From NCBI RefSeq assembly GCF_009834535.1, contig NC_045701.1, forward strand, positions 32,798,001 to 32,862,000: a stretch of DNA of 64,000 bases, read 5' to 3'. This document shows, in pieces, positions 1 to 46,021 of this stretch. The DNA is from Camelus ferus. Taxonomy: Eukaryota. The notes below the pieces were generated by a model, which saw only the letters and a program-made list of their open reading frames with translations, was not told the origin of the DNA and did no database searches. The first letter of the stretch is position 1. The number at the start of each line of letters is the position of its first letter. The position numbers were made by a program, and so were the translations under genes.

Positions 1-1804
1 CTTTCTTCTAGTGATTTTATTTCTAGGACTTTATCCTGCGTTAGGTCTAAAGTGTGTGTTTGTGGGGGGTGTATAAAAGGGTTACTCACAGAGATGTTCA
101 TCACACCATTACTTAATAAAAGATCTCAAAATGGAATCAGTGTTGATGTCCAAAATAGGGAGCTAGTAAAATATTACACATTCACATTGTATATCATGCA
201 GCCTTTACCGTCTACATTATCCCCACTCTAGAAACTAGGCTGAGAAAACAAAAGAACGAAATCTAGGCTAAGAACATTAGTAGGCAAGTTATTTTTAAAA
301 ACCTAATAAATATTTGAGGAAAAGCAAAAGCTCGCCAATTAATCAATGCAAATTAAAAATATTAACCATTTTGCTTATCTGATTGAAAAGGATGACAAAA
401 GTGATAATACTGAGATTCAGCAATTACACAGAGAAAGTGGCACTTTCACACCTGTACCTAAAGGTCCTAAAAAAAAACGGAAAAAGGAGTCTGATGTCGT
501 CATCAACCACACAGAGAAAAGTGGAGAAGGTAATGCCTAAACACCTTACACAAGTGACATCTTAGAAACAGTACTTAATCCAGCACTACATTGGGGATAA
601 GCTTTTAAAATTTTTTATAGCTTGAACGCTATGGAAACTTTAAAGTCACAACACAGAATGACATTTGCCATATGGAAGAATGTTCTCTAGGTACGTTCAG
701 GTCATAAGTAATGTATTTGACTACATGCCTGTTACTACACTTGAAAATTTAAATACTGGAATTAAGTGAATTTCCTCTACACTTGCATTTGATTCTGCCA
801 AGCACTTGGGAAACAGTTCATAAGCACATGAACGGAAGTTCAAGCTTGGGGAGTTCATGAAAGTCCAGGTAATTCCATCTTTCATGAAATTACATGCAAG
901 GATTAGCCGATTAACTCTTCGTTGTCAGTGTGAGCTTGTAGACCTACGAGTCCCCAGATCACCGCGCAGAGGGTCTGGTTAGAGCTGCTCGTGTGGGTCT
1001 TGGTCTGTCGTTTCCGTGCCGCTCACCTTACGTGCTCATCAAGAGAAGTTCAAATTTTGTGTGTTCAGTAAATTTCCTCAGAACAATAGTAGCTGTCTGA
1101 GTGAACTCCCATTGTTCCTTCAGTTGTGGCCTGGTAATCACTCTTGCTTTGGCAGTTCTTCAAAGCTTTGAAGAGTTTGAGACCTTTTCCTCGGGTTAGT
1201 TTTGGTTGTTTTTGGTAGGAAGATGGAGTGAAATCGCAGCCCCTGGCGATGCGCTGCTACCCATGTCTCAACTCCGATCACTGGGTGCCTATTTTCACTC
1301 CCCTTTCTTTGCACTCTATTCTTTATCCTTTTCTCTCTCTCTCTTCTTTTAAAGTTGTGTTAATGTTTTTAAAACAAAATAAAGTGCTGAAAAATTTAAG
1401 TAAGAATAAATTCAGATCTCCTAATGCTCAGGCACTTACACAGCTGTTACACTATTTCCCCTTTGCCCTGCTTTCTGCTTAGTACTTCTCAGATACAGAA
1501 ACACATTTCATGAGCTGTAACCATAATACAGCTAAGACACAATACATGTATTAGAGAAAGGACTAAGTTCTTTGCAGCTTTGAAGTAAGTGCTAAGCTGT
1601 GTGTGTTTACGGACAGGGAGAAAATCCTTAACTTTCATAAGATTTTCAAGAGGGCTTATCACAATTCATAAACAACTGAGAATTGCATTAGTTTCCTCTT
1701 CTGATATTTTTGCAACCATGTCCCTGTGGGACACAAAAGCCTTCACCCTGAGGAGGAAGCAGGAAAATTGGGGTCTTTCGCAGTGTCGTGATTTCCACTG
1801 AGTC

Positions 1805-2486
1805 TGTTGGGGCTCAAGTGACCTGGACGGTAACGGTCAGGGGCAGAGCCTCGTTCTTCCCTGCTCTTTCCCTGGCAGTGCCGTCCACCTGCTCAGGAGA
1901 GAGAGCTGCTCAATCTGCTTGACAAGTTCTAGAAAGAAGTGGAAGTAGCCATGGTCTGAGCAGGGGGCCAGGACAGATGAGAAGACAAGCAGGCTCCAGT
2001 CCCAGGGGGAGAGTGTATCCAGCAGGACCCTATGGGGCCTCCCTGGGACAGACCCCTCCCCCCACGCCCGGTCCTCTGCTGTGGCTCCCCTCTGAAGTGC
2101 CCAGATAATGTCCTATGCATGTTTCCTGAGGTTTCCGACGCTACAAACCTCCACCAAATGGAAAAAATGAACTATCTGATGATCATGAGCACGAGGCCCC
2201 CCCAGACCTTCTTGTCCTGAGGACTGATAATGTTAACAGCTGTGTTACCTCACGTCATCCAATCAGAGAACTGTGCATGAGCCGATCACACGCCCTGGGA
2301 CGCCCCTCCCTCACCTGGCCTTTAAAAATGCCTTGCTGAAACCTCTGGGGGCTTCCAGGGTTTTCAGACGTGTGTCCCCTGTTCTCCTTGCTCAGCCCTG
2401 CAGTACACCTTTCTCTGCTCCAAACTCGGACGTTTCTGTATTACTTGGCCTCATGGCGCCTGGCAGGCAAAACTGTGCTCGGAAGC
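1805..2486 (+). mobile_element. ERV1-like solo LTR directly upstream of the left cathepsin G gene (ends approximate)
   Basis: Starts tgttggggctc. Contains a CRE/CCAAT (cacgtcatccaatc, 2251-2264), a GC box, tttaaaaa and a degenerate polyA-region motif. Its 3' half resembles the LTR at 15209-15823. No TSD found. Confidence 0.6.
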
Positions 2487-2865
2487 GAGAGGAAATGAGG
2501 AAACAGACAGCTACCAGCTTTCAGGCTCCTTGGGAGGTTACTGAATTTGGTGGGTTTGGGGCTTTGGGACACAGCGCCCCAGCCCCCGTCCTTGTGGCCC
2601 TGGGTTCCCATTTCTGCTCCCGGCACCGACTCAGCAGCTCTACAGGGTATTGGGTGACAGCCTGGGGGGCCCTCTTTCCCCACACCACGGGCAGTTGGTG
2701 GGCTAGCCCCGTGGGCACCCTTGGGTGATGAAATCTAGCACAGCAGCAGGGGATGGGGCTGCGGATTCTCCAGCCCCCACCTCCCCCTTCCTTCCTCTCT
2801 CAGGGGCTCAAAGTCTGGCAGGAGGAAGCACCAGCAGCAACTGCCTGGCCGGCCTTCCCAGGAAG

Positions 2866-5435
2866 ATGCGGCCACTCCTGCTCCTGGTGGTCTTGCTCCT
2901 GCCCCCCAGGGCGAGGGCAGGTGAGTAACCTTCTCCGTCCCATAGACGCTGGGCCCAGACCGCCCAGGCACCTCCTAACGCTGTACCATTGGGCAGCTCA
3001 TGGGAGTTCACAGCTCCTCAGCTTTCTCATCTGTAAAACAGGGATTCTGTCAACGCCTACCTCAGAGAATCACTGAGAGTGAGAGTACCTCCCGCAGAGA
3101 AAGTTCTTGGAATTGCCCCTGGGATACAGTACTTTCTGTTCTCCGTGGCGGCGTCCACACTCCTTCTGCAGCTCATGGGGCAGAGCCTAGGAGAGGAAGA
3201 CACAGCGATAGCAGCCGCATCAGCCCACGTCTAGATCCTTAAACACCAGTCCCGTGCTGGGCCCGGGCGGGCCTTGAGCTGGACTCCCAGGGATCTGGGA
3301 CGCTCCCTGAGGAAGATAGTACCACAGAGGTTCAGGGAGAGGCCACTCCAGAGGGCTCTGGATTTGCCATCCTGACAGCAGAGAAACCCTCCTCCTTCTG
3401 GGGGCTGGACCTGGCCCTGCCTTGTGCGGAGGTGGGAGGGAGCAGAGGCTGGGATGGGGAGTCAGCAGTGCTTCCTGCAGAATCTGGAGCCCTCTCCCAG
3501 TGCTGCTGCTCTGCAGACCCCAATTCCCACCACCAACCTCCCCTGTGCCTCAATCATCTCTCCTGCATCCCAATCTTCCCGGCTTTCGGGAGTCACCAAA
3601 CTGATGCCCACATCCCCCCCCACCACCACCACCACCAGTGCAGAGATAAGTGCCTAATGCTTCCTTTCAGGGAAGATCATCGGAGGACAAGAAGCCAGGC
3701 CCCATTCCTTCCCCTACATGGCATATGTTCGCGGCCGAACTTCACTGGCTCTCATAACTTGTGGAGGATTCCTGGTGCGAGAAGACTTTGTCATGACAGC
3801 GGCTCACTGCTTGGGAAGGTGAGGAACTAAGGAGCTTCTGGCAGCCAGTAAGGCAGACCCAGAAGAGTTCACGAGGGGAGCCATCTGTAAGCAGGGTTCT
3901 AGCCAGGAAGGGGTCAAAAACAGACCAGGTGGGTCTTGGGGGCAGGGGGTGGCCAGTGCAAATGGGGAGAAAAGGAGGACGTGATAAAAAAAAAAGAGCA
4001 GAAGGGGAGATCGAAGGCACACATCAGGGCTCAGAATAGGGATTCAAGTTCTTTCTCTGTTATTCTGGGGGAGGCAAAACTTAAGAGCTCTGCGTACCCC
4101 AATCCCCAGCTCAAGGCTGGGGCACAGGTCAATCAGCCCCAACCCCACCCTCTCCTCAGTTCCCTCAGCTGCAGTCTCCTGCCTGGGCTGTTCCCCTGGC
4201 CCGCAGAGCTGTGGACCTGAGCTCCTGCAGCAGCTCATACCTACCTCTAGCCTCCCTTCCTCTGCAGCCAAATGAATGTGATCCTGGGGGCCCACAACAT
4301 CAGCAGGTCTGAAAGCACCCAGCAGCAAGTATCTGTGCGCAGAGCCATCCGCCACCCCAGATACAATCAGCAGAACAACCAGAACGACATCATGTTACTG
4401 CAGGTACCGCCTGCCTGACCCTCTGCTTCTTCAGCCCACATGGCTGCTCCCAGCTGGAGCCTCATGGGTCTGGGACCAGGGAGGAGGAAGCAGGGGGCAG
4501 ATGCCCAGGGCACTGGTGGGCACGGGGTGAGGTCGGCATACGTGGCCCCTGAGTGCCTGCCCTCCTCCGGCCAGCTGGCGAGCAGAGTCAGGCGGAATCG
4601 AGCCGTGATGCCAGTGGCCCTGCCTCAGAGCCAGAGCAGGCTGAGTCCGGGGACCGTGTGCACCGCGACCGGCTGGGGCCTGGTCGGCCTGAACAGGAGG
4701 ACAGACACACTCCGGGTTGTGCAGCTGAGAGTGCAGAGGGATGGGGAGTGTCACAGACGCTTCAGTTTCTACACTGGCCAAACGCAGATTTGTGTGGGGG
4801 ACCCAAGAGAAATGAAGTCTGCCTTCCTGGTAAGACCATGGGCATCACGAAACCCTGCATGAGACAGAAGGGGCTGGGCAGACTGGGTACTGGGGACAGA
4901 CTACATCCTTGTGGCCTCAGTCTGGAACCCAGACCAGAGTGAGGTGGGGGCTTTTCCCATCAATCCTGTCTCTGGGGACCAGGAGGAGCAGCAGACACAC
5001 AGGACACACAAGTGCAGCCTTCTCCTGGGGAGGGTGAATGTACCTTGACCTGGGTTGCCTGGAGAAGTAACCTCAGCCAGGGCTGAAGGCCAGTGATGGA
5101 AAAATCCAGAAGCTTGACTTCTGTACCCCCACCACCCAGCCATCTCACACACACCCAGCAATGGAAGGAGCCCACCCACCCCTGTCTTCTCTGAGGGCCA
5201 GACCTAGGGCAGCAGGAGTGGGAGCCCTGGAGGGGGGAGGCCTGGCTTAGCGTCCCTTCCTCTGTTTCCACAGGGAGACTCTGGAGGCCCCCTGGTGTGT
5301 AACAACATGGCCCAGGGCATTGTCTCCTATGGAAATCAGTTGGGAACTCCTCCAGCAGTCTTCACCAGGGTTTCCAGCTTCCAGCACTGGATAAGGAGAA
5401 CAATGAGACGCTTTGCAAAGCGGGGACCAGACTGA
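2866..5435 (+). CDS. CTSG: Cathepsin G, left-arm copy; intact, catalytic triad present, 251 aa
   Basis: Exons 2866-2920, 3671-3818, 4268-4403, 4575-4829, 5274-5435 (55/148/136/255/162 nt), all GT-AG. Signal [18 protein letters not shown], propeptide GK, mature [33 protein letters not shown]. Exon 4 [17 protein letters not shown] closely matches cathepsin G. AATAAA at 5499. Confidence 0.92.
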
Positions 5436-5498
5436 GACCCCACTGAAACTGACTCTTTCTGGGGCAGAGGCCAGCTCCACGGTGGTTCCCAGAGCCTT

Positions 5499-5504
5499 AA
5501 TAAA
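5499..5504 (+). terminator. Polyadenylation signal of the left CTSG
   Basis: AATAAA 64 nt after the stop codon. Confidence 0.7.
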
Positions 5505-5934
5505 TGTCTAAGCCTAGAGCCGAAATAACTGATTTCTCATTTGTTCGTAAACATGATTCAGAACACAATAAATGTACACCAGGACTGAGTCTGAGCTCCT
5601 CCCGGAAAATAGGGTCTCTTGCCCAGGACATGCAAACCCCTGTCCCTACCGTCCTGGGGGTCAGGATGAGCGTCCTCCCTTCCTCTGTCACTGCTCCACC
5701 CACAGCCTCAGGGAGTGATGGAGAGACATCTCTCTCCCCAGAGCAAGGCTCCTTATTGTTACCCTCCCAGAGACTCCCCGCTAGGTGTTAAGGTGTACCC
5801 CAAACCGTGTGCCATCGGCGTGGGTAGGACTGGCCGACCAAAGGAACAGAACTGAAATTCCACACGCGGCCCACTTTAACATGTGGGTCACGTGGCGTCT
5901 CAAATCACTGGGAAACAGTGAACTCTTAATAGAT

Positions 5935-6180
5935 GCTGTCTAAACAAACTGATAGTCATTTGGGGAGAAAAGATAAAGCTGGATCCGGGCTTCTCATCAT
6001 AAACCGAAATAACACCTCAAATGGGATCAAAGAGCTAAATGTGAAAAGTCACACCAAGCGAGTACTAGAAGAAAGACAAAAAATTTACTTTCGTAAAAAT
6101 ATCTAACAAACACCCATGTTGAAAGCAGCGCTATTCACGGTGGCCAAGAGATGGGAGCAACCCAAGTGTCTACGGACAGC
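5935..6180 (+). mobile_element. Old L1 3'-region remnant (mirrored at ~7520-7765)
   Basis: Resembles L1 ORF2 3'/3'UTR text (atcaaagagctaaatgtgaaa; gcagcgctattcacggtggccaagagatgggagcaacccaagtgtc). Confidence 0.5.
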
Positions 6181-6554
6181 TGGACCCTTTTCTCCTAAGC
6201 CCTTACCCACACCAGCCCCCACTGCGCTCTCGGCCGGTGTTCTCATTTTCAGTGTGACGAGGGTCTCCTTCTGGTTTTGTCACCCTAAAATTATACAAAA
6301 CTCTACACAATGTGTTCACTAAAATAAAATGACTTTTATGCTAAAGAATAGCCCATGACTACTACATCAATGTGGTAATCAAATAAAAGAGTTCTGAAGT
6401 CACATAATTTAAACCTAAACTTTTAACACCTTGAGGGAACGAGAAAGAACCAGCTGGGAGGTTCTTCTACATCCATCAAATGTTAACTACTCCTCACAGT
6501 GTGAATTTTGCCATCTCAACTTCTGCAGTGTCCATAATCTTAAATGGAATAATC

Positions 6555-7144
6555 TATAAACAGATATCAAATCCAACTGGCAATGGGTAGCCAGGGTCAC
6601 AATGGATAATGCATCTGACTGTGGATCAGAACATTTTAGTTTCACTCCTAGCTGGCTCGTTCCTCCTTTTAAATGCAATCTTCTTTAAATTGACATCCAA
6701 ATGAATTTTTTTTTTTTCAAAATGAAACTTTTTGGAATCCAACTGGCTATACATAGAAATGCTTTGGTAAATTTGATCATTCTTTTATAGACATTTCTTG
6801 TCAGAAAGTCATTTGCCTAGTGTTCAGTATAAGGATTTATTGACAAAATTTTAATCAACAATACATCTTTGCCAATACTCAGTTATTTTTGCTATATTTG
6901 CCACCACCTACGAATAGGAATTTTTTCTTACTTATATATTCTCAAGGAGAACAGTCTCATTATTAGATGTTTGCGTGGCACATGGAAAGCGCGCTTGCTG
7001 GTGGAAGGGGGAGGAGAGGGCAGAGGAAGAGCCCTGTTCCGTGCAGCCCTTCCTCCTTCTGACATTTACAGGAGGCCCGGAGCACCGACCTGGTCCCCAG
7101 CAAACTCCCAGGGGAGTGCGCTTTCCATTTGATTTGTGTTCAGT
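6555..7144. other. Unique 590-bp palindrome spacer
   Basis: Arm complementarity stops at aatggaataatc (6554) / gattattccatt (7145). The same spacer occurs reverse-complemented at 27706-28294. Confidence 0.93.
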
Positions 7145-8194
7145 GATTATTCCATTTAAGATAATGGACACTGCAGAAGTTGAGATGGCAAAATTCACAC
7201 TGTGAGGAGTAGTTAACATTTGATGGATGTAGAAGAACCTCCCAGCTGGTTCTTTCTCGTTCCCTCAAGGTGTTAAAAGTTTAGGTTTAAATTATGTGAC
7301 TTCAGAACTCTTTTATTTGATTACCACATTGATGTAGTAGTCATGGGCTATTCTTTAGCATAAAAGTCATTTTATTTTAGTGAACACATTGTGTAGAGTT
7401 TTGTATAATTTTAGGTTGACAAAACCAGAAGGAGACCCTCGTCACACTGAAAATGAGAACACCGGCCGAGAGCGCAGTGGGGGCTGGTGTGGGTAAGGGC
7501 TTAGGAGAAAAGGGTCCAGCTGTCCGTAGACACTTGGGTTGCTCCCATCTCTTGGCCACCGTGAATAGCGCTGCTTTCAACATGGGTGTTTGTTAGATAT
7601 TTTTACGAAAGTAAATTTTTTGTCTTTCTTCTAGTACTCGCTTGGTGTGACTTTTCACATTTAGCTCTTTGATCCCATTTGAGGTGTTATTTCGGTTTAT
7701 GATGAGAAGCCCGGATCCAGCTTTATCTTTTCTCCCCAAATGACTATCAGTTTGTTTAGACAGCATCTATTAAGAGTTCACTGTTTCCCAGTGATTTGAG
7801 ACGCCACGTGACCCACATGTTAAAGTGGGCCGCGTGTGGAATTTCAGTTCTGTTTCTTTGGTCGGCCAGTCCTACCCACGCCGATGGCACACGGTTTGGG
7901 GTACACCTTAACACCTAGCGGGGAGTCTCTGGGAGGGTAACAATAAGGAGCCTTGCTCTGGGGAGAGAGATGTCTCTCCATCACTCCCTGAGGCTGTGGG
8001 TGGAGCAGTGACAGAGGAAGGGAGGACGCTCATCCTGACCCCCAGGACGGTAGGGACAGGGGTTTGCATGTCCTGGGCAAGAGACCCTATTTTCCGGGAG
8101 GAGCTCAGACTCAGTCCTGGTGTACATTTATTGTGTTCTGAATCATGTTTACGAACAAATGAGAAATCAGTTATTTCGGCTCTAGGCTTAGACA

Positions 8195-8200
8195 TTTATT
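8195..8200 (-). terminator. Polyadenylation signal of the right CTSG
   Basis: tttatt on the plus strand = AATAAA on the minus strand. Confidence 0.7.
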
Positions 8201-8263
8201 AAGGCTCTGGGAACCACCGTGGAGCTGGCCTCTGCCCCAGAAAGAGTCAGTTTCAGTGGGGTC

Positions 8264-10827
8264 TCAGTCTGGTCCCCGCTTTGCAAAGCGTCTCATTGTT
8301 CTCCTTATCCAGTGCTGGAAGCTGGAAACCCTGGTGAAGACTGCTGGAGGAGTTCCCAACTGATTTCCATAGGAGACAATGCCCTGGGCCATGTTGTTAC
8401 ACACCAGGGGGCCTCCAGAGTCTCCCTGTGGAAACAGAGGAAGGGACGCTAAGCCAGGCCTCCCCCCTCCAGGGCTCCCACTCCTGCTGCCCTAGGTCTG
8501 GCCCTCAGAGAAGACAGGGGTGGGTGGGCTCCTTCCATTGCTGGGTGTGTGTGAGATGGCTGGGTGGTGGGGGTACAGAAGTCAAGCTTCTGGATTTTTC
8601 CATCACTGGCCTTCAGCCCTGGCTGAGGTTACTTCTCCAGGCAACCCAGGTCAAGGTACCTTCACCCTCCCCAGGAGAAGGCTGCACTTGTGTGTCCTGT
8701 GTGTCTGCTGCTCCTCCTGGTCCCCAGAGACAGGATTGATGGGAAAAGCCCCCACCTCACTCTGGTCTGGGTTCCAGACTGAGGCCACAAGGATGTAGTC
8801 TGTCCCCAGTACCCAGTCTGCCCAGCCCCTTCTGTCTCATGCAGGGTTTCGTGATGCCCATGGTCTTACCAGGAAGGCAGACTTCATTTCTCTTGGGTCC
8901 CCCACACAAATCTGCGTTTGGCCAGTGTAGAAATCGAAGCGTCTGTGACACTCCCCATCCCTCTGCACTCTTAGCTGCACAACCCGGAGTGTGTCTGTCC
9001 TCCTGTTCAGGCCGACCAGGCCCCAGCCGGTCGCGGTGCACACGGTCCCCGGACTCAGCCTGCTCTGGCTCTGAGGCAGGGCCACTGGCATCACGGCTCG
9101 ATTCCGCCTGACTCTGCTCGCCAGCTGGCCGGAGGAGGGCAGGCACTCAGGGGCCACGTATGCCGACCTCACCCCGTGCCCACCAGTGCCCTGGGCATCT
9201 GCCCCTGCTTCCTCCTCCCTGGTCCCAGACCCATGAGGCTCCAGCTGGGAGCAGCCATGTGGGCTGAAGAAGCAGAGGGTCAGGCAGGCGGTACCTGCAG
9301 TAACATGATGTCGTTCTGGTTGTTCTGCTGATTGTATCTGGGGTGGCGGATGGCTCTGCGCACAGATACTTGCTGCTGGGTGCTTTCAGACCTGCTGATG
9401 TTGTGGGCCCCCAGGATCACATTCATTTGGCTGCAGAGGAAGGGAGGCTAGAGGTAGGTATGAGCTGCTGCAGGAGCTCAGGTCCGCAGCTCTGCGGGCC
9501 AGGGGAACAGCCCAGGCAGGAGACTGCAGCTGAGGGAACTGAGGAGAGGGTGGGGTTGGGGCTGATTGACCTGTGCCCCAGCCTTGAGCTGGGGATGGGG
9601 GTATGCAGAGCTCTTAAGTTTTGCCTCCCCCAGAATAACAGAGAAAGAACTTGAATCCCTATTCTGAGCCCTGATGTGTGCCTTCGATCTCCCCTTCTGC
9701 TCTTTTTTTTTATCACGTCCTCCTTTTCTCCCCATTTGCACTGGCCACCCCCTGCCCCCAAGACCCACCTGGTCTGTTTTTGACCCCTTCCTGGCTAGAA
9801 CCCTGCTTACAGATGGCTCCCCTCGTGAACTCTTCTGGGTCTGCCTTACTGGCTGCCAGAAGCTCCTTAGTTCCTCACCTTCCCAAGCAGCGAGCCGCTG
9901 TCATGACAAAGTCTTCTCGCACCAGGAATCCTCCACAAATGGTTGCCCCCACTTGAGTCTGGATCTGAACATATGCCATGTAGGGGAAGGAATGGGGCCT
10001 GGCTTCTTGTCCTCCGATGATCTTCCCTGAAAGGAAGCATTAGGCACTTATCTCTGCACTGGTGGTGGTGGGGGGGGGGGGGATGTGGGCATCAGTTTGG
10101 TGACTCCCGAAAGCCGGGAAGATTGGGATGCAGGAGAGATGATTGAGGCACAGGGGAGGTTGGTGGTGGGAATTGGGGTCTGCAGAGCAGCAGCACTGGG
10201 AGAGGGCTCCAGATTCTGCAGGAAGCACTGCTGACTCCCCATCCCAGCCTCTGCTCCCTCCCACCTCCCCACAAGGCAGGGCCAGGTCCAGCCCCCAGAA
10301 GGAGGAGGGTTTCTCTGCTGTCAGGATGGCAAATCCAGAGCCCTCTGGAGTGGCCTCTCCCTGAACCTCTGTGGTACTATCTTCCTCAGGGAGCGTCCCA
10401 GATCCCTGGGAGTCCAGCTCAAGGCCCGCCCGGGCCCAGCACGTGACTGGTGTTTAAGGATCTAGACGTGGGCTGATGCGGCTGCTATCGCTGTGTCTTC
10501 CTCTCCTAGGCTCTGCCCCACGAGCTGCAGAAGGAGTGTGGACGCCACCGAGAACAGCAAGTACTGTATCCCAGGGGCAATTCCAAGAGCTTTCTCTGCG
10601 GGAGGTACTCTCACTCTCAGTGATTCTCTGAGGTAGGCGTTGACAGAATCCCTGTTTTACAGATGAGAAAGCTGAGGAGCTGTGAACTCCCATGAGCTGC
10701 CCAATGGTACAGCGTTAGGAGGTGCCTGGGCGGTCTGGGCCCAGCGTCTATGGGACGGAGAAGGTTACTCACCTGCCCTCGCCCTGGGGGGCAGGAGCAA
10801 GACCACCAGGAGCAGGAGTGGCCGCAT
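8264..10827 (-). CDS. CTSG: Cathepsin G paralog, right-arm copy; open ORF but catalytic His57->Arg (predicted inactive protease)
   Basis: Exons 10827-10773, 10026-9879, 9430-9295, 9124-8870, 8425-8264, all GT-AG and in frame. TAARC (CGC at 9892-9890) replaces TAAHC. Confidence 0.9.
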
Positions 10828-11206
10828 CTTCCTGGGAAGGCCGGCCAGGCAGTTGCTGCTGGTGCTTCCTCCTGCCAGACTTTGAGCCCCTGAGAGAGGA
10901 AGGAAGGGGGAGGTGGGGGCTGGAGAATCCGCAGCCCCATCCCCTGCTGCTGTGCTAGATTTCATCACCCAAGGGTGCCCACGGGGCTAGCCCACCAACT
11001 GCCCGTGGTGTGGGGAAAGAGGGCCCCCCAGGCTGTCACCCAATACCCTGTAGAGCTGCTGAGTCAGTGCCGGGAGCAGAAATGGGAACCCAGGGCCCCA
11101 AGGACGGGGGCTGGGGCGCTGTGTCCCAAAGCCCCAAACCCACCAAATTCAGTAACCTCCCAAGGAGCCTGAAAGCTGGTAGCTGTCTGTTTCCTCATTT
11201 CCTCTC

Positions 11207-11887
11207 GCTTCCGAGCACAGTTTTGCCTGCCAGGCGCCATGAGGCCAAGTAATACAGAAACGTCCGAGTTTGGAGCAGAGAAAGGTGTACTGCAGGGCTG
11301 AGCAAGGAGAACAGGGGACACACGTCTGAAAACCCTGGAAGCCCCCAGAGGTTTCAGCAAGGCATTTTTAAAGGCCAGGTGAGGGAGGGGCGTCCCAGGG
11401 CGTGTGATCGGCTCATGCACAGTTCTCTGATTGGATGACGTGAGGTAACACAGCTGTTAATATTATCAGTCCCCAGGACAAGAAGGTCTGGGGGCCTCGT
11501 GCTCATGATCATCAGATAGTTCATTTTTTCCATTTGGTGGAGGTTTGTAGCGTCGGAAACCTCAGGAAACATGCATAGGACATTATCTGGGCACTTCAGA
11601 GGGGAGCCACAGCAGAGGACCGGGCGTGGGGGGAGGGGTCTGTCCCAGGGAGGCCCCATAGGGTCCTGCTGGATACACTCTCCCCCTGGGACTGGAGCCT
11701 GCTTGTCTTCTCATCTGTCCTGGCCCCCTGCTCAGACCATGGCTACTTCCACTTCTTTCTAGAACTTGTCAAGCAGATTGAGCAGCTCTCTCTCCTGAGC
11801 AGGTGGACGGCACTGCCAGGGAAAGAGCAGGGAAGAACGAGGCTCTGCCCCTGACCGTTACCGTCCCAGGTCACTTGAGCCCCAACA
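11207..11887 (-). mobile_element. ERV1-like solo LTR (mirror of 1805-2486)
   Basis: Reverse complement of the left-arm LTR. Confidence 0.6.
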
Positions 11888-14800
11888 GACTCAGTGGAAA
11901 TCACAACACTGCGAAAGACCCCAATTTTCCTGCTTCCTCCTCAGGGTGAAGGCTTTTGTGTCCCACAGGGACATGGTTGCAAAAATATCAGAAGAGGAAA
12001 CTAATACAATTCTCAGTTGTTTATGAATTGTGATAAGCCCTCTTGAAAATCTTATGAAAGTTAAGGATTTTCTCCCTGTCCGTAAACACACACAGCTTAG
12101 CACTTACTTCAAAGCTGCAAAGAACTTAGTCCTTTCTCTAATACATGTATTGTGTCTTAGGTGTATTATGGTTACAGCTCATGAAATGTGTTTCTGTATC
12201 TGAGAAGTACTAAGCAGAAAGCAGGGCAAAGGGGAAATAGTGTAACAGCTGTGTAAGTGCCTGAGCATTAGGAGATCTGAATTTATTCTTACTTAAATTT
12301 TTCAGCACTTTATTTTGTTTTAAAAACATTAACACAACTTTAAAAGAAGAGAGAGAGAGAAAAGGATAAAGAATAGAGTGCAAAGAAAGGGGAGTGAAAA
12401 TAGGCACCCAGTGATCGGAGTTGAGACATGGGTAGCAGCGCATCGCCAGGGGCTGCGATTTCACTCCATCTTCCTACCAAAAACAACCAAAACTAACCCG
12501 AGGAAAAGGTCTCAAACTCTTCAAAGCTTTGAAGAACTGCCAAAGCAAGAGTGATTACCAGGCCACAACTGAAGGAACAATGGGAGTTCACTCAGACAGC
12601 TACTATTGTTCTGAGGAAATTTACTGAACACACAAAATTTGAACTTCTCTTGATGAGCACGTAAGGTGAGCGGCACGGAAACGACAGACCAAGACCCACA
12701 CGAGCAGCTCTAACCAGACCCTCTGCGCGGTGATCTGGGGACTCGTAGGTCTACAAGCTCACACTGACAACGAAGAGTTAATCGGCTAATCCTTGCATGT
12801 AATTTCATGAAAGATGGAATTACCTGGACTTTCATGAACTCCCCAAGCTTGAACTTCCGTTCATGTGCTTATGAACTGTTTCCCAAGTGCTTGGCAGAAT
12901 CAAATGCAAGTGTAGAGGAAATTCACTTAACTCCAGTATTTAAATTTTCAAGTGTAGTAACAGGCATGTAGTCAAATACATTACTTATGACCTGAACGTA
13001 CCTAGAGAACATTCTTCCATATGGCAAATGTCATTCTGTGTTGTGACTTTAAAGTTTCCATAGCGTTCAAGCTATAAAAAATTTTAAAAGCTTATCCCCA
13101 ATGTAGTGCTGGATTAAGTACTGTTTCTAAGATGTCACTTGTGTAAGGTGTTTAGGCATTACCTTCTCCACTTTTCTCTGTGTGGTTGATGACGACATCA
13201 GACTCCTTTTTCCGTTTTTTTTTAGGACCTTTAGGTACAGGTGTGAAAGTGCCACTTTCTCTGTGTAATTGCTGAATCTCAGTGTTATCATTTTTGTCAT
13301 CCTTTTCAATCAGATAAGCAAAATGGTTAATATTTTTAATTTGCATTGATTAATTGGCGAGCTTTTGCTTTTCCTCAAATATTTATTAGGTTTTTAAAAA
13401 TAACTTGCCTACTAATGTTCTTAGCCTAGATTTCGTTCTTTTGTTTTCTCAGCCTAGTTTCTAGAGTGGGGATAATGTAGACGGTAAAGGCTGCATGATA
13501 TACAATGTGAATGTGTAATATTTTACTAGCTCCCTATTTTGGACATCAACACTGATTCCATTTTGAGATCTTTTATTAAGTAATGGTGTGATGAACATCT
13601 CTGTGAGTAACCCTTTTATACACCCCCCACAAACACACACTTTAGACCTAACGCAGGATAAAGTCCTAGAAATAAAATCACTAGAAGAAAGAGAGAAATA
13701 ATGTAAACACACACAGAAATCGTTCCAAGGAGCCACCCAGGGCAGTCCGGTCTTCATGAAGCTACAGTCTTTATATGGTAATAGTTTTCCTCCTAATCTA
13801 CCTCACACTATGTCAAGTCCTACTGCCAGGTGTAAGGGGGCAGGCTGACCCGTCAGACACCGCCTCGCAAGTCCACACACCCTTGCCCGTAGCGGTGGAT
13901 ATCCTTGGCCACTCTGCCGCTGGTTCTGGCTCACACCCTGGGACAGACTTATCTTTATTTATATTACATGTAGGGGCATGAACCTCAGTCCAGAAACCCA
14001 GGAAATGCCTCGTTTCAAGGGGAAGACAGTTTGCTGTGACCCAGATGTCCTGTATCTATCAAACAGTACCGCCAGTGAGTTGGATGTGACAGAACACAAC
14101 AAATTCACAGTAACTGGACAAACACTGAATTGAGTGAGATGAACATCAAGAAGAGAAGGCTCTAAAAACAATAGCAAATGAATCACATGTGTATGAAAGC
14201 AAAATCCAGCACCCTCAAAAATAAGACGAAAAGAAATTGAAACACTGTAACTGACTATACTTCAATAAGAATTTTTTAAATTAAGAAAATACTGTATAAA
14301 GGAAATAAAAGCTTATGCTTCCCACAAGACAGCCCATAAGGCCTTCTGCTGAGTCTTCCCCGGAGCTCACAGCCCCCGCAGAGGCACATTTGAGAGAAGA
14401 GTTGGATGAGGGTCCAGGGGAACGTAGAAGAAATTTCTCATCACTGTAAGTTTCCCAATGACGGGGACAGAGCCTGTTATGTGCTGGCACAAAGAGAGGG
14501 ATCAACCCTTGACTACTGATGGATGGCGAAGTGGTGCTTTCCTGCCCAGCAGCCCTGGGTCCCTTTGGCTCACAAGGCTGCCATATCCCAGGCCGCCAGC
14601 AGGGGGAGGCAGGGGTCTGAGTCCAGGACAGGCTGAAGGCCTGAGGCTGCTGGGAGTCTCCACAGGCCTTGGTGCTGCCTAAGCCCCTGGGGCGTGCTGG
14701 GCTGGACCGAGGGCCTGAGCTGGCCTGCCCAGGTGGGAGGTGGGTTCTGGCTTCTCTGATAAGCACCAGGTGGGCTGGCAGCTCAGCTAAGGCAGGGACA

Positions 14801-15208
14801 AGCAGTGGAGGAGAACTCACACGGGCAATGGGACCTCTGCTGGGGAGAAGGCAGGGAGGCTGTCTCAAGGCAGGGTGAGCAGGCAGGGAAAGGAGCTGGT
14901 GGCCAGGGCCCTCAAATGGAAAACAGGGGCTGGTGTGGGCCGGTCAGTCAGGGAGCAAGGCTGACTGAGCTCAGTGCCGGGAGCAGAGCAGGACATGGGA
15001 CCAGGGGAGGCTGAGGGCCATTGTGGGAGCATCCCAGCCTCCTAAGCTATGGCCAGTGCTGGTTACAGGGGAAGCCTGCCCTCACCGGAGAGAGGCCCTG
15101 GAAACAGGAAACTGAGTGTCCCTGGTATGGCCCCTGACCTCCTGGGTTCCTGGATTCACCCTCCTTCCGCTGACCTGCTCTTTACTCTGCCGATTGCCGA
15201 GGGGTTGA

Positions 15209-15823
15209 TGACAGATGTGGCTTAGAGAAGCTAAGAGGTTCCCGAGGCCCAGAGAGGACCACTCTGGGGGAGAGAAGGCTGTCCTTTTCTAATGGACAGT
15301 CCTTTAGACTCAGCCCTTGCAGAAGGATAAGCACCAAAGACGTGTAACTGGGAAATCAACTGTAACCCAGAAGGATCCCATGGGGCCTTCCCGGGGGTGG
15401 GGGGTGGGGGCAGACCCCTCCCCCATAGGCTCTGCTGGAGCTCCTCTCTGAAGTACCCAGATAATAGTATCTCCTGCATATTTCCTGAGTTTTTCAGATG
15501 CTCAAAACCACCACCAGATTGAAGAAATTAACCACTTGATGATCAAGCGTAAGTAGCACACAGACCTGGCATCTAAGGATCAACCACCATCAACTAATCA
15601 GAGGACTGTGCACAGCTGAGCACACACCCTGGGCCGCCCCACCCTCAGCGAGCCTTTAAAAAGGCTCAGCTGAAAGCCTTTGGGGAGTTTGGGATTTGAG
15701 GAACATGAGCCACGGGTTCTCTTGGCTCGGCCCTGCAACAAACCTTTCTCCGCTCCAAACTCCAACGTTTTAGTTTGTTTGGACTCACGGTGCGTCGGGC
15801 ACAGGAGCTTGCATTCAGTAACA
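15209..15823 (+). mobile_element. ERV1-like solo LTR downstream of GZMH (5' end approximate)
   Basis: Ends ..tcagtaaca. Contains cctttaaaaa and ccctgcaacaaacctttctccgctccaaactcc, shared with the 1805-2486 element. Confidence 0.6.
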
Positions 15824-15995
15824 CAATGAGACTCTAGACAGACAGCATGGGATTTAGGGCGGAGCGAGGCCTGGGGAGAAAGGCAGAAGCAGAACCCCGA
15901 GCTGGCAGCAGAGGGCTGCCTGGGGCAGGGCTGTTGCATATCAGAAGTGGTCGCTGAATAAACAGGAATTCAGTCATCTTTGCTCTAGAGATCCC

Positions 15996-16001
15996 TTTAT
16001 T
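15996..16001 (-). terminator. GZMH polyadenylation signal
   Basis: AATAAA on the minus strand ~95 nt after the stop. Confidence 0.65.
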
Positions 16002-29413: not shown

Positions 29414-31976
29414 TCAGTCTGTCCCCGCTTTGCAAAGCGTCTCATTGTTCTCCTTATCCAGTGCTGGAAGCTGGAAACCCTGGTGAAGACTGCTGGAGGA
29501 GTTCCCAACTGATTTCCATAGGAGACAATGCCCTGGGCCATGTTGTTACACACCAGGGGGCCTCCAGAGTCTCCCTGTGGAAACAGAGGAAGGGACGCTA
29601 AGCCAGGCCTCCCCCCTCCAGGGCTCCCACTCCTGCTGCCCTAGGTCTGGCCCTCAGAGAAGACAGGGGTGGGTGGGCTCCTTCCATTGCTGGGTGTGTG
29701 TGAGATGGCTGGGTGGTGGGGGTACAGAAGTCAAGCTTCTGGATTTTTCCATCACTGGCCTTCAGCCCTGGCTGAGGTTACTTCTCCAGGCAACCCAGGT
29801 CAGGTACCTTCACCCTCCCCAGGAGAAGGCTGCACTTGTGTGTCCTGTGTGTCTGCTGCTCCTCCTGGTCCCCAGAGACAGGATTGATGGGAAAAGCCCC
29901 CACCTCACTCTGGTCTGGGTTCCAGACTGAGGCCACAAGGATGTAGTCTGTCCCCAGTACCCAGTCTGCCCAGCCCCTTCTGTCTCATGCAGGGTTTCGT
30001 GATGCCCATGGTCTTACCAGGAAGGCAGACTTCATTTCTCTTGGGTCCCCCACACAAATCTGCGTTTGGCCAGTGTAGAAATCGAAGCGTCTGTGACACT
30101 CCCCATCCCTCTGCACTCTTAGCTGCACAACCCGGAGTGTGTCTGTCCTCCTGTTTCAGGCCGACCAGGCCCCAGCCGGTCGCGGTGCACACGGTCCCCG
30201 GACTCAGCCTGCTCTGGCTCTGAGGCAGGGCCACTGGCATCACGGCTCGATTCCGCCTGACTCTGCTCGCCAGCTGGCCGGAGGAGGGCAGGCACTCAGG
30301 GGCCACGTATGCCGACCTCACCCCCGTGCCCACCAGTGCCCTGGGCATCTGCCCCTGCTTCCTCCTCCCTGGTCCCAGACCCATGAGGCTCCAGCTGGGA
30401 GCAAGCCATGTGGGCTGAAGAAAGCAGAGGGTCAGGCAGGCGGTACCTGCAGTAACATGATGTCGTTCTGGTTGTTCTGCTGATTGTATCTGGGGTGGCG
30501 GATGGCTCTGCGCACAGATACTTGCTGCTGGGTGCTTTCAGACCTGCTGATGTTGTGGGCCCCCAGGATCACATTCATTTGGCTGCAGAGGAAGGGAGGC
30601 TAGAGGTAGGTATGAGCTGCTGCAGGAGCTCAGGTCCGCAGCTCTGCGGGCCAGGGGAACAGCCCAGGCAGGAGACTGCAGCTGAGGGAACTGAGGAGAG
30701 GGTGGGGTTGGGGCTGATTGACCTGTGCCCCAGCCTTGAGCTGGGGATGGGGGTATGCAGAGCTCTTAAGTTTTGCCTCCCCCAGAATAACAGAGAAAGA
30801 ACTTGAATCCCTATTCTGAGCCCTGATGTGTGCCTTCGATCTCCCCTTCTGCTCTTTTTTTTATCACGTCCTCCTTTTCTCCCCATTTGCACTGGCCACC
30901 CCCTGCCCCCAAGACCCACCTGGTCTGTTTTGACCCCTTCCTGGCTAGAACCCTGCTTACAGATGGCTCCCTCGTGAACTCTTCTGGGTCTGCCTTACTG
31001 GCTGCCAGAAGCTCCTTAGTTCCTCACCTTCCCAAGCAGCGAGCCGCTGTCATGACAAAGTCTTCTCGCACCAGGAATCCTCCACAAATGGTTGCCCCCA
31101 CTTGAGTCTGGATCTGAACATATGCCATGTAGGGGAAGGAATGGGGCCTGGCTTCTTGTCCTCCGATGATCTTCCCTGAAAGGAAGCATTAGGCACTTAT
31201 CTCTGCACTGGTGGTGGTGGGGGGGGGGGGGATGTGGGCATCAGTTTGGTGACTCCCGAAAGCCGGGAAGATTGGGATGCAGGAGAGATGATTGAGGCAC
31301 AGGGAGGTTGGTGGTGGGAATTGGGGTCTGCAGAGCAGCAGCACTGGGAGAGGGCTCCAGATTCTGCAGGAAGCACTGCTGACTCCCCATCCCAGCCTCT
31401 GCTCCCTCCCACCTCCCCACAAGGCAGGGCCAGGTCCAGCCCCCAGAAGGAGGAGGGTTTTCTCTGCTGTCAGGATGGCAAATCCAGAGCCCTCTGGAGT
31501 GGCCTCTCCCTGAACCTCTGTGGTACTATCTTCCTCAGGGAGCGTCCCAGATCCCTGGGAGTCCAGCTCAAGGCCCGCCCGGGCCCAGCACGTGACTGGT
31601 GTTTAAGGATCTAGACGTGGGCTGATGCGGCTGCTATCGCTGTGTCTTCCTCTCCTAGGCTCTGCCCCACGAGCTGCAGAAGGAGTGTGGACGCCACCGA
31701 GAACAGCAAGTACTGTATCCCAGGGGCAATTCCAAGAGCTTTCTCTGCGGGAGGTACTCTCACTCTCAGTGATTCTCTGAGGTAGGCGTTGACAGAATCC
31801 CTGTTTTACAGATGAGAAAGCTGAGGAGCTGTGAACTCCCATGAGCTGCCCAATGGTACAGCGTTAGGAGGTGCCTGGGCGGTCTGGGCCCAGCGTCTAT
31901 GGGACGGAGAAGGTTACTCACCTGCCCTCGCCCTGGGGGGCAGGAGCAAGACCACCAGGAGCAGGAGTGGCCGCAT
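29414..31976 (-). pseudogene. CTSG: Third cathepsin G copy (right-arm type, His57Arg) with frameshifts that are probably sequence errors
   Basis: Exons 31976-31922, 31175-31028, 30582-30447, 30273-30018 (256 nt, +1 T at ~30155), 29574-29414 (-1 G near the stop). CGC at 31041-31039. Confidence 0.85.
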
Positions 31977-45986: not shown

Positions 45987-46021
45987 CCGTTGCTGGCCCC
46001 CCAACCCAGTGTGATTCTAGA

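What the first reader, a model, noticed from the sequence alone, without database searches (positions are those of the whole stretch)
9890..9892. Catalytically dead cathepsin G paralog (His57Arg) with a fully open reading frame
Seen: TAAHC (CAC, 3805-3807) in the left arm is TAARC (CGC) in the right arm and again at 31041-31039, so it is not an isolated base call. Signal peptide, GK propeptide, Asp102, Ser195, all splice sites and the polyA signal are intact in the right-arm copy. Established: His57 is essential to the triad, and azurocidin is a precedent for a neutrophil granule pseudo-protease with antimicrobial and chemotactic roles. Inference: camelids may encode a paired active enzyme plus pseudo-enzyme (decoy for inhibitors, or non-proteolytic antimicrobial). 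The dead copy keeps the ancestral-like QIQ loop and the active copy has the novel loop. This is my best candidate for an undescribed system here.
Basis: partly seen in the sequence, partly recalled or inferred. Interest (0 to 1): 0.82.

Follow-up and report, generated by a model that had tools for sequence, protein, structure and literature searches.

The report
Dead cathepsin G twin in camels
Camels carry, next to their normal neutrophil protease cathepsin G, a mirror-image twin gene that is intact but has its catalytic histidine replaced by arginine; database sequences show the same dead version in cattle, sheep, deer, pigs, hippo, a whale, horses, a rhino and horseshoe bats, and I found no paper describing it.

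Summary
Codon 57 (chymotrypsin numbering) is CAC (His) in copy A (3805-3807, + strand). It is CGC (Arg) in copy B (9892-9890, - strand) and in copy C (31041-31039).

Copy B is a complete five-exon, 251-codon cathepsin G gene. Copy C is not independent support. It differs from the B unit by 1 substitution and 20 one-base homopolymer indels in 12.9 kb and follows a 100-N gap, so it is probably a redundant assembly of the same locus.

Real support comes from independent assemblies. Bactrian camel and dromedary both have the same tail-to-tail A/B pair with the same CGC. All 14 DNA runs listed hold B-type words, and several probable RNA runs hold B-type exon 2.

The arms evolve in concert. Between wild Bactrian camel and dromedary, only three coding patches stay different: the 17-nt loop island, codon 57 and codon ~173. 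In alpaca both arms are the active type.

Arg57 "cathepsin G" is not camel-specific. It occurs in pig, hippo, a beaked whale, bovids, deer, equids, rhino and rhinolophoid bats. dN/dS for those copies is 0.29-0.67.

Best reading: a non-catalytic cathepsin G homologue, a new member of the azurocidin-like kind. Function was not tested, and read laying failed. I found no paper describing it.

The parts
8264..10827 (-). Copy B: complete cathepsin G-like gene, ATG to stop. Exons are 10827-10773, 10026-9879, 9430-9295, 9124-8870 and 8425-8264. It encodes 251 aa with Arg57.
   Evidence: Searches give the spliced model, canonical splice sites and the 756-nt ORF. The product is identical to residues 47-297 of RefSeq XP_032337679.1 / XP_074221808.1 (P0041). 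Pfam Trypsin matches at 1.8e-64. The mature part aligns without gaps to human cathepsin G 1kyn at 2.5e-100.
9890..9892 (-). Codon 57 (chymotrypsin numbering) of copy B: CGC = Arg in place of the catalytic His.
   Evidence: The same CGC is present in bactrianus B and dromedary B.
9939..9966 (-). B-type loop island (residues ~34-41, [10 protein letters not shown]), just before Cys42. It differs at 17 of 28 nt from copy A.
   Evidence: It is closest to the same loop of the hippo and Mesoplodon Arg57 genes, at 6 mismatches in 30.
8933..8935 (-). Codon ~173 of copy B: GAT = Asp. Copy A has AGT (Ser) and alpaca has AAT (Asn). This is the third paralog-specific coding patch.
   Evidence: Asp at this position accompanies Arg57 in 10 of 11 Arg57 proteins.
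8195..8200 (-). AATAAA polyadenylation signal of copy B.
2866..5435 (+). Copy A: the active-type cathepsin G gene. It has His57 (CAC, 3805-3807), the derived loop [10 protein letters not shown] (3731-3758) and Ser173 (4764-4766).
   Evidence: It matches RefSeq XP_014413194.2.
1..6572 (+). Left palindrome arm, which continues beyond the window start.
   Evidence: 99.1% inverted match to 7127-13691. Arms are at least 8.3 kb in the other assemblies.
6573..7126 (.). 554-bp spacer at the centre of the palindrome.
7127..13691 (-). Right palindrome arm, as far as the window shows its partner.
29414..31976 (-). Copy C: a B-type copy with homopolymer-length frameshifts in exon 4 (about 30154-30156) and exon 5 (about 29420-29422). 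It is part of the repeated unit 27603-46532 and is probably a redundant assembly of the B locus.

Best explanation
Copy B is a real gene, fixed in the genus Camelus and probably transcribed. It encodes a catalytically inactive homologue of cathepsin G.

How it arises and persists. B lies tail-to-tail with the active gene A in a palindrome with arms of at least 8 kb. The arms are continually homogenised by gene conversion. Only three coding patches resist this: the 34-41 loop next to Cys42, residue 57 and residue ~173. By general knowledge of the chymotrypsin fold, not tested here, all three should lie at or near the substrate cleft.

What the protein should do (inferred). It has the same signal peptide, the same two-residue propeptide and the same IIGG N-terminus as A. 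It should therefore be sorted to granules and trimmed by cathepsin C like the enzyme. It should fold with a formed S1 pocket, since Asp102, Asp194 and Ser195 are kept. Lacking the general base His57, it cannot form the acyl-enzyme.

Proposed role (inferred). It acts without proteolysis as a highly cationic granule protein (net charge about +16). Its cleft may still bind substrate-like ligands or standard-mechanism inhibitors, but it would not be trapped by serpins. The closest analogue is azurocidin.

Wider context. B belongs to a widespread Arg57 (usually Asp173) type of "cathepsin G" found in other artiodactyls, perissodactyls and rhinolophoid bats.
For: Shown:
- CGC and an intact ORF are present in three independent Camelus assemblies.
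- All 14 DNA runs listed hold at least 93% of copy B's words. Because 18.5% of those words are B-specific, a genome lacking B could hold at most about 81%.
- Fourteen runs labelled or guessed as RNA hold 77-100% of B-type exon 2 words, of which 60% are B-specific. Some of these runs are very small contig sets of 27-34 M letters.
- The promoter differs from A at 2 of 500 nt, and neither difference is fixed.
- Concerted evolution: nine dromedary-versus-ferus substitutions are shared by both arms. All 20 sites that separate A from B in both species are coding: 17 in the island, codon 57 and 2 in codon 173. None is non-coding.
- The same pattern holds for ferus versus bactrianus.

Family level:
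- Arg57 copies in hippo, Mesoplodon and Bos have dN/dS of 0.29-0.44. The His57 paralog pair over the same split gives 0.45. Horse versus rhino gives 0.67.
- The hippo codon is CGA, a synonymous change within Arg.
- Arg57 is present in Bos (4 species), Bison, Bubalus bubalis, Ovis (2), Capra (2), Cervus (2), Odocoileus and Muntiacus.
- In Mesoplodon the Arg57 and His57 genes also lie tail-to-tail.

From established knowledge: His57 is the general base of chymotrypsin-fold proteases. Azurocidin and haptoglobin are triad-less homologues with non-proteolytic roles.
Against: - The RNA label of most runs is the tool's guess. Run X15 holds more of the gene than the exons alone can explain, so it contains intronic or genomic reads.
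- No transcript-derived protein of either camel copy is on record.
- Gene conversion from A would keep B's frame, promoter and motifs intact without any selection on B.
- Selection on A alone (keeping His57), plus poor recombination across the 17-mismatch island only 48 bp away, could explain why the patch survives.
- Alpaca has overwritten or never had the Arg57 copy and appears to do without it.
- A-versus-B dN/dS is 0.9, on few sites.
- Whole-protein trees put Arg57 copies in at least 6 places, so common descent of the type is not shown.
- The Arg57-Asp173 association does not reach significance (sign test p about 0.06-0.13).
Confidence: 0.58

Rival explanations
1. B is a functionless passenger. 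A chance His57Arg hit inactivated one arm of the palindrome. The copy looks healthy only because gene conversion from the selected arm A keeps repairing it. The surviving differences are simply the tract that conversion has not yet crossed, shielded by the hyper-diverged island.
For: Concerted evolution of the arms is demonstrated. Alpaca has two identical active-type arms, showing that A-over-B conversion happens and is tolerated. Codon 57 is only 48 bp from the island. There is no direct expression or protein evidence.
Against: Three separate patches persist in all three Camelus species, including codon 173, which lies in another exon about 1 kb away. Meanwhile every non-coding difference in the gene was erased or is lineage-specific. 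The same Arg57 + Asp173 (+ Ile41) combination is kept in diverged paralogs of other artiodactyls under purifying selection. Conversion cannot be the main explanation there, because those paralogs are diverged (dN/dS 0.29-0.44).
Confidence: 0.3
2. Arg57 is an assembly or base-calling artefact, or A and B are two alleles of one gene wrongly laid out as an inverted repeat.
For: The window does contain one probable false duplication, the C unit with homopolymer indels after a 100-N gap. Palindromes are a known artefact of some long-read libraries.
Against: The same palindrome, with A and B types, is present in independently made assemblies of C. bactrianus and C. dromedarius, and the palindrome also in alpaca. 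All 14 DNA runs listed carry B-type words. The old short-read C. ferus annotation EPY82662.1 contains pieces of both loops.
Confidence: 0.02
3. B is still a protease. Arg57, or a substrate residue, substitutes for the general base, giving a slow or highly substrate-restricted enzyme.
For: Asp102, Ser195, Gly193, Asp194 and the S1 residues are all retained in artiodactyl Arg57 copies. From my own knowledge, substrate-assisted catalysis is known for engineered His-less serine proteases.
Against: At physiological pH arginine is protonated and cannot act as a general base (established chemistry). B has no compensating histidine, because it differs from A only in the loop, at 57 and at 173. Perissodactyl and bat Arg57 copies have also lost Ser195, replaced by Thr.
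Confidence: 0.05

Closest known systems
Cathepsin G (CTSG, EC 3.4.21.20; human structures 1kyn/1cgh)
   Same: It lies in the chymase locus and has the same five-exon structure (55/148/136/255/162). It has a signal peptide, a two-residue propeptide and IIGG. The mature part aligns to human CTSG without gaps at E 2.5e-100. It is strongly cationic.
   Different: It has Arg instead of the catalytic His57. As in the active camel copy, the S1 residues read Ser189/Gly216/Ala226 by alignment, rather than the Ala189/Glu226 of the human enzyme (my reading of the alignment).
Azurocidin / CAP37 / heparin-binding protein (AZU1)
   Same: Both are neutrophil-granule members of the chymotrypsin fold that have lost the catalytic triad but keep an open frame. 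Azurocidin is cationic and acts without proteolysis (PMC4646688, PMC7914634).
   Different: They have different origins: azurocidin lies in the met-ase locus and descends from elastase/PR3, whereas this gene is a CTSG duplicate in the chymase locus. Azurocidin lost both His57 and Ser195. Camel B lost only His57, so its cleft may still bind ligands.
Arg57 'cathepsin G' / 'cathepsin G-like' entries of other Laurasiatheria (e.g. Bos taurus E1BAD2, Equus XP_014589131.1, Sus A0A8D1UQL6, Hippopotamus XP_057578785.1)
   Same: They share TAARC, usually Asp at ~173 and, in artiodactyls, Thr40-Ile41 before Cys42. All have an intact ORF. Where checked (Mesoplodon), the gene lies tail-to-tail with a His57 paralog.
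   Different: In those species the Arg57 gene has diverged from the His57 paralog; bovine CTSG1 and CTSG2 are 78% identical according to PMC6096847. In Camelus the two are about 95% identical because the arms are still converting each other. Equids, rhino and rhinolophoid bats additionally have Thr195. Whole-gene trees do not unite the Arg57 copies.
Large inverted-repeat (palindrome) gene pairs homogenised by arm-to-arm gene conversion, as in primate Y-chromosome palindromes
   Same: Arms of at least 8.3 kb are 99.1-99.9% identical around a ~550-bp spacer. Species-specific substitutions are present in both arms. The spacer appears in both orientations within one assembly.
   Different: Here the two arms carry functionally different alleles of the same gene, and these differences survive the homogenisation.

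Membership tests
Peptidase S1A (chymotrypsin fold) | Significant match to the Trypsin domain over its full length | tested here: met
   PF00089 at E 1.8e-64, covering profile positions 1-220 of 220.
Cathepsin G lineage (by descent) | Closest solved relative is cathepsin G rather than chymase, granzyme or duodenase | tested here: met
   1kyn cathepsin G scores 2.5e-100, against 3.4e-79 for duodenase, 7.6e-79 for granzyme B and about 4e-65 for chymase. In the tree B falls inside the artiodactyl CTSG clade.
Cathepsin G lineage (by descent) | Chymase-locus position and the conserved five-exon structure | tested here: met
   Exon sizes are 55/148/136/255/162, as in horse, hippo, Bos and buffalo CTSG genes. 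Trypsin-domain genes flank it.
Cathepsin G as an enzyme (EC 3.4.21.20) | Catalytic triad His57-Asp102-Ser195 | tested here: not met
   The triad reads Arg57 (CGC), Asp102 (GAC) and Ser195 (TCT). B should therefore not be filed as an active cathepsin G.
Cathepsin G as an enzyme (EC 3.4.21.20) | Proteolytic activity on chymotryptic or tryptic substrates | not testable with these tools
   This needs recombinant or purified protein.
Non-catalytic serine protease homologues (azurocidin type) | S1 fold with at least one triad residue replaced and the reading frame kept | tested here: met
Non-catalytic serine protease homologues (azurocidin type) | The gene is expressed as mRNA and protein | tested here: inconclusive
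   B-type exon 2 words are held by 14 probable RNA runs. However, the labels are guesses, at least one run holds intronic sequence, read laying failed and no transcript-derived protein is on record.
Non-catalytic serine protease homologues (azurocidin type) | Sequence kept by selection after loss of catalysis | tested here: inconclusive
   For camel B this is confounded by gene conversion, although all 20 persistent differences are coding. For Arg57 copies of hippo, whale and Bos, dN/dS is 0.29-0.44; for horse versus rhino it is 0.67.
Azurocidin (AZU1) orthologue | Descent from the elastase/PR3 group in the met-ase locus | tested here: not met
   The best matches are cathepsin G. Myeloblastin (PR3) scores only about 1e-42 to 1e-43. 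The locus is the chymase locus.

The most novel reading that the evidence does not exclude
Arg57/Asp173 pseudo-cathepsin G is an old gene type, dating at least to the base of Artiodactyla and possibly to early Scrotifera. It was born as the inverted partner of CTSG. Selection keeps it distinct at a few cleft-lining positions, while gene conversion repeatedly overwrites the rest and so hides its age in gene trees. Camelus shows the process at its most extreme, with a 99%-identical palindrome and only three protected coding patches. A corollary is that equids, whose single annotated CTSG gene carries Arg57 and Thr195, have no active cathepsin G at all.
Probability: 0.4. Interest if true: 0.72.

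Novelty: new member of a known kind. Interest (0 to 1): 0.6.

Why it matters
Cathepsin G is treated as one of the standard active neutrophil and mast-cell proteases of mammals. If many ungulates and some bats carry a conserved triad-dead version, comparative work on neutrophil proteases, NETs and inhibitor biology in these animals is using a wrong assumption. This applies most to horses, where it is the only annotated copy. It also applies to cattle, sheep, pigs and camels, where it sits beside an active copy. Database names such as "cathepsin G" hide a pseudo-enzyme.

The camel locus is also a clean natural experiment. Two alleles of one gene sit in a converting palindrome, and everything has been erased except three coding patches. 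This points directly to the residues that matter for the difference in function. It makes testable the old question of which cathepsin G effects are independent of proteolysis.

Tried and rejected
- Read laying. The first attempt (X25, X36, X10 and X42 on window:6400-11000) found the machine busy. As a result there are no paralog-specific read counts, no splice joints, no depth ratio and no direct test of copy C. I did not resend any form of the request.
- Exact look-up of the 251-aa B protein in assembled contigs found nothing on record. Hippo isoform P0053 was also not on record.
- Donor search for the derived A-type loop island. No match with 9 or fewer mismatches exists in the window or the fetched loci, other than the alpaca orthologue. 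A micro-conversion from a neighbouring protease gene is therefore not supported.
- Single origin of all Arg57 proteins is rejected by the AU test (p 3e-58). Pig plus cetruminant paralog I as one clade is rejected (p 4e-6). Perissodactyls plus bats as one clade is borderline (p 0.049). These tests cannot separate recurrent mutation from gene conversion.
- The Arg57-Asp173 association on independent pairs always goes in the same direction, but there are too few pairs (p 0.06-0.13).
I read PMC4646688, PMC8537139, PMC6096847, PMC7914634, PMC7924851 and PMC13337447. None mentions a triad-dead cathepsin G. The library lacks most subscription journals, so older biochemical work on horse, pig or bovine neutrophils could have been missed.
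- I did not run a structure prediction, because the tool returns no coordinates and distances between residues 57, 173 and the loop could not be measured.
- The masked N stretches were left unread, including their counterpart in L001.
Full report
**1. What is at the coordinates**

The window is part of the chymase locus of a camel. Locus L001, from Camelus ferus assembly GCA_009834535.1 (CM020773.1), is 100% identical to window 1-20003, so the window comes from that assembly.

Reading the three sites directly confirms the observation:
- Copy A has ...ACAGCGGCTCACTGC... at 3805-3807 (+ strand), which is T-A-A-H-C.
- Copy B has CGC at 9892-9890 (- strand).
- Copy C has CGC at 31041-31039 (- strand).

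I built spliced models:
- Copy A exons: 2866-2920, 3671-3818, 4268-4403, 4575-4829, 5274-5435.
- Copy B exons: 10827-10773, 10026-9879, 9430-9295, 9124-8870, 8425-8264.

Both have the family's exon sizes (55/148/136/255/162), AG...GT at every junction and a 756-nt open frame. Both encode a signal peptide, the GK dipeptide, IIGG, Asp102 and Ser195, and both carry an AATAAA signal (B: 8200-8195).

The product of B matches Pfam Trypsin at 1.8e-64. Its mature part aligns without a gap to human cathepsin G 1kyn at 2.5e-100, ahead of duodenase, granzymes and chymase.

A and B proteins differ only in three places:
- the loop before Cys42 ([10 protein letters not shown] in [11 protein letters not shown] in B);
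- residue 57 (His in A, Arg in B);
- one residue five places after Cys168, called ~173 here (Ser in A, Asp in B).

**2. Structure of the window, and why the third copy is not support**

Self-comparison shows the following:
- 1-6572 is an inverted copy of 7127-13691 (99.1% identical), around a 554-bp spacer.
- 7127-25406 is repeated directly at 28277-46532 (99.8% and 99.2%).
- The second unit starts right after a 100-N gap (27502-27601).

Outside the palindrome centre, the B and C units differ by one substitution and 20 single-base indels in 12.9 kb. Each indel adds or removes one base of a run of identical bases. This is the signature of sequencing error in a redundant contig, not of divergence. 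Two of these indels produce the frameshifts of copy C in exons 4 and 5.

The C unit begins with the palindrome centre in the flipped orientation, together with the inner arm-specific variants. This suggests a second haplotype or inversion isomer of the same locus that was scaffolded in tandem. I could not test this with reads.

The recurrence of CGC at 31041-31039 therefore says little.

**3. Independent evidence that Arg57 is real and fixed**

*Annotation.* RefSeq annotates both types in all three Camelus species.
- B type: XP_032337679.1 (C. ferus), XP_074221808.1 (listed with the same sequence) and XP_064342442.1 (dromedary).
- A type: XP_014413194.2, XP_074221807.1 and XP_031308641.2.

*Assemblies.* The DNA of C. 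bactrianus GCA_048773025.1 (L002) and C. dromedarius GCA_036321535.1 (L005) shows the same tail-to-tail pair. In both, B has CGC and an intact 756-nt frame.

*DNA runs.* Of the 31-mers of window 8200-10900, 18.5% are absent from arm A. A genome without B could therefore hold at most about 81% of them. All 14 DNA runs listed, from seven studies, hold 93-97%.

**4. Transcription**

- 60% of the 31-mers of B's exon 2 are B-specific.
- Fourteen runs labelled or guessed as RNA hold 77-100% of the 13 sampled words. They include one declared RNA-Seq cDNA library (X36, 0.85) and very small contig sets of 27-34 M letters.
- Runs of a second species label (organism C) hold all the sampled words.
- The 500 bp upstream of the ATG differ between A and B at two positions, and neither is fixed between paralogs.

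This makes transcription probable. It is not proof of a spliced mRNA, for four reasons:
- Most RNA labels are the tool's guesses.
- Run X15 holds 57% of the words of the whole gene, more than the exons can supply.
- No transcript-derived protein of either camel copy is on record.

**5. The arms convert each other, and only three coding patches resist**

*Ferus versus bactrianus, over the 6.5-kb arms.* The sites that separate A from B in both species are:
- 16 of the 17 island sites;
- codon 57;
- codon 173;
- one site at 761;
- six sites at the inner arm boundary.

The other 26 A/B differences of the window are private to ferus A.

*Ferus versus dromedary, over the 2.9-kb gene.*
- Nine substitutions are species-specific and present in both arms. 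They include the coding changes Asp169Asn and the His/Pro site at residue 236. This demonstrates concerted evolution.
- Exactly 20 sites separate A from B in both species, and all 20 are coding: 17 in the island, 1 in codon 57 and 2 in codon 173.
- No non-coding site does so.

*Alpaca (GCA_048564905.1).* The palindrome is present with arms 99.9% identical. Both genes encode the same A-type, His57 protein. The A-type loop therefore predates the camel-alpaca split. The B type has either been overwritten in alpaca or acquired its Arg57 later.

*Interpretation.* The pattern fits selection keeping the two arms functionally different. A weaker explanation is also possible. Selection only on A's His57, combined with the island acting as a barrier to recombination 48 bp away, would protect the exon 2 patch. 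It would not protect codon 173, which lies in exon 4.

**6. Arg57 cathepsin G outside camels**

Among about 130 CTSG-like database proteins, TAARC occurs in:
- Camelus and pig;
- hippo and the beaked whale Mesoplodon;
- yak and goat;
- white rhino and Equus;
- Rhinolophus and Hipposideros.

One dolphin has Gln and one deer has Leu at this position.

Cluster members extend the list:
- Bos taurus (E1BAD2), B. indicus, B. javanicus and Bison;
- Bubalus bubalis;
- Ovis aries, O. canadensis and Capra ibex;
- Odocoileus, Muntiacus and two Cervus species.

Bubalus kerabau has Cys57 and Rhinolophus sinicus has His57 with Thr195. These are the changes expected from CpG decay of a CGC codon.

Pig, hippo, Mesoplodon, buffalo and the deer Odocoileus and Cervus canadensis also have a His57 paralog.

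Equids, rhino and rhinolophoid bats combine Arg57 with Thr195. A review of the locus counts a single cathepsin G gene in the horse and does not comment on its triad (PMC8537139).

Codon 57 is CGC in horse, rhino, yak, Mesoplodon and camel, and CGA in hippo.

Pairwise dN/dS (Nei-Gojobori):

| Pair | Type | dN/dS |
|---|---|---|
| Hippo - Mesoplodon | Arg57 copies | 0.29 |
| Mesoplodon - Bos | Arg57 copies | 0.35 |
| Hippo - Bos | Arg57 copies | 0.44 |
| Mesoplodon - buffalo (same split) | His57 paralogs | 0.45 |
| Horse - rhino | Arg57 copies | 0.67 |

The dead copies therefore evolve under constraint similar to the active ones.

Arg57 goes with Asp at ~173 in 10 of 11 proteins (4 of 45 His57 proteins have Asp). 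In artiodactyls it also goes with Ile41. On independent pairs the Asp association always goes the same way, but there are too few pairs for significance (p 0.06-0.13).

In Mesoplodon the Arg57 and His57 genes lie tail-to-tail 9.6 kb apart, the same arrangement as in camels.

B's loop island is nearest to the loops of the hippo and Mesoplodon Arg57 genes.

**7. One origin or many**

The whole-protein tree shows:
- two cetruminant paralog clades, one mostly Arg57 and one His57;
- camel A and B together, with A next to alpaca;
- pig Arg57 next to warthog His57;
- bat Arg57 next to a bat His57 copy.

Arg57 needs at least six changes on this tree.

AU tests give the following results:
- All Arg57 proteins as one clade: rejected (p 3e-58).
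- Pig plus cetruminant paralog I as one clade: rejected (p 4e-6).
- Perissodactyls plus bats as one clade: borderline (p 0.049).

Gene conversion is demonstrable in camels. It is also visible in Bos, where the exon 5 product of the Arg57 gene is 98% identical to the buffalo His57 paralog, against 63% for exon 4. These trees therefore cannot distinguish repeated His-to-Arg changes from one old paralog whose history is overwritten.

Either answer is interesting. Repeated change to the same residue would indicate selection for Arg. A single origin would make this an old pseudo-enzyme.

**8. How it most likely works**

*Shown:*
- the gene anatomy;
- the loss of His57;
- the retention of Asp102, Asp194, Ser195, the activation N-terminus and the Cys42-Cys58 pair;
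- a net charge of about +16 for the mature protein.

*From established enzymology:* without the general base, no acyl-enzyme forms. There is then no proteolysis and no covalent trapping by serpins.

*Inferred:*
- The protein is made in the same cells as A, processed by cathepsin C and stored in granules.
- It acts through its cationic surface (antimicrobial, glycosaminoglycan or LPS binding) and possibly through a still-formed cleft that binds but does not cut.
- The three protected patches, by general knowledge of the chymotrypsin fold, should all lie at or near the substrate cleft: the 34-41 loop on the prime side, residue 57 at the centre and residue ~173 near S3/S4. I could not measure distances between them.

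I put 0.58 on this reading. I put 0.30 on a functionless copy kept tidy by conversion. Artefact and residual activity each get small weights.

**9. Comparison with what is known, and novelty**

By descent this is a cathepsin G. By the enzyme's defining triad it is not one. By mode of action its nearest analogue is azurocidin, which has a different origin in the met-ase locus and has lost both His57 and Ser195 (PMC4646688, PMC7914634).

I used all ten literature searches and read six papers on the chymase locus, neutrophil proteases and camelid granzymes. None mentions a triad-dead cathepsin G. The sequences are public but are named simply "cathepsin G" or "cathepsin G-like".

I rate it a new member of a known kind (non-catalytic serine protease homologues). 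The camel palindrome is an unusually clear case of coding differences surviving gene conversion.

The library lacks most subscription journals, so older protein-chemistry papers on horse, pig or bovine neutrophils may have been missed.

Noticed in passing
window 27603-46532 (against 7127-25406): A 19-kb unit is repeated after a 100-N gap. Outside the palindrome centre it differs by 1 substitution and 20 one-base homopolymer indels in 12.9 kb, plus 4 substitutions and 12 indels in the next 5.3 kb. This looks like a redundant, unpolished contig of the same locus scaffolded in tandem. The last 2.1 kb before the gap (25407-27501) has no copy of 400 bp or more elsewhere in the window.
   Followed up: partly
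window 27603-28277 against 6573-7247: In the second unit the palindrome spacer, together with inner arm variants out to about 0.3-0.7 kb, is in the opposite orientation. This fits an inversion isomer or haplotype produced by recombination between the arms.
   Followed up: partly
window 20004-20152 and 41154-41302: Two N stretches of identical length (149) sit at the same relative position in both repeat units. The counterpart in L001 is not N, so they are masked rather than gaps.
   Followed up: no
window 2728-2865 (A) and 10965-10828 (B): The RefSeq 297-aa models of both camel genes start at an upstream in-frame ATG (MKSSTAAG...). This adds 46 residues in front of the signal peptide. The MRPLLLL start, which matches other species, is the more likely one.
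   Followed up: partly
window 5274-5435 (A) and 8425-8264 (B), exon 5: By alignment to human cathepsin G, both camel copies have Ser189, Leu192 and Ala226, where the human enzyme has Ala189, Lys192 and Glu226. This predicts a purely chymase-like S1 pocket without the tryptic side activity of human cathepsin G.
   Followed up: no
L003/L004 (alpaca GCA_048564905.1, CM108725.1, about 33.90-33.93 Mb): Alpaca has the same palindrome, with arms of at least 8.3 kb at 99.9% identity and a spacer of about 550 bp. Both genes encode the identical His57, A-type protein. No Arg57 copy is present.
   Followed up: yes
L006 (horse), L007 (white rhino); proteins P0074, P0146-P0148, P0068: The gene annotated as cathepsin G in horse, Przewalski horse, donkey, zebra and white rhino has Arg57 (CGC) and Thr195 (ACT/ACC) in an intact frame. 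A review counts only one cathepsin G gene in the horse (PMC8537139). Equids may therefore have no active cathepsin G.
   Followed up: partly
proteins P0161 (Bubalus kerabau), P0178 (Rhinolophus sinicus), P0021/P0160 (Dama dama), P0057 (Globicephala): Position 57 varies within the dead-type genes: Cys in swamp buffalo, His with Thr195 in R. sinicus, Leu in fallow deer and Gln in pilot whale. Cys and His are the two products of CpG decay of CGC.
   Followed up: no
L009 (Bos mutus) 12871-13029: The exon 5 product of the yak Arg57 gene is 98% identical to the buffalo His57 paralog, while exon 4 is only 63% identical. This suggests exon-scale gene conversion between the two bovid paralogs.
   Followed up: no
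L011/L012 (Mesoplodon densirostris CM046083.1, 75.39-75.41 Mb): The Arg57 gene (+) and the His57 gene (-) lie tail-to-tail with 9.6 kb between their 3' ends. This is the same arrangement as the camel palindrome.
   Followed up: partly
protein P0046 (C. ferus EPY82662.1, 283 aa): This old short-read gene model contains both the QIQTQVGAT and the [10 protein letters not shown] loop pieces in series. It is a collapsed chimera of the two arms.
   Followed up: no
window about 16100-19000 (-) and its repeat about 37200-40200: A trypsin-domain gene of 250-276 aa is called in the other camel assemblies 5-8 kb upstream of copy B, at the place collinear with this stretch. I did not study it.
   Followed up: no
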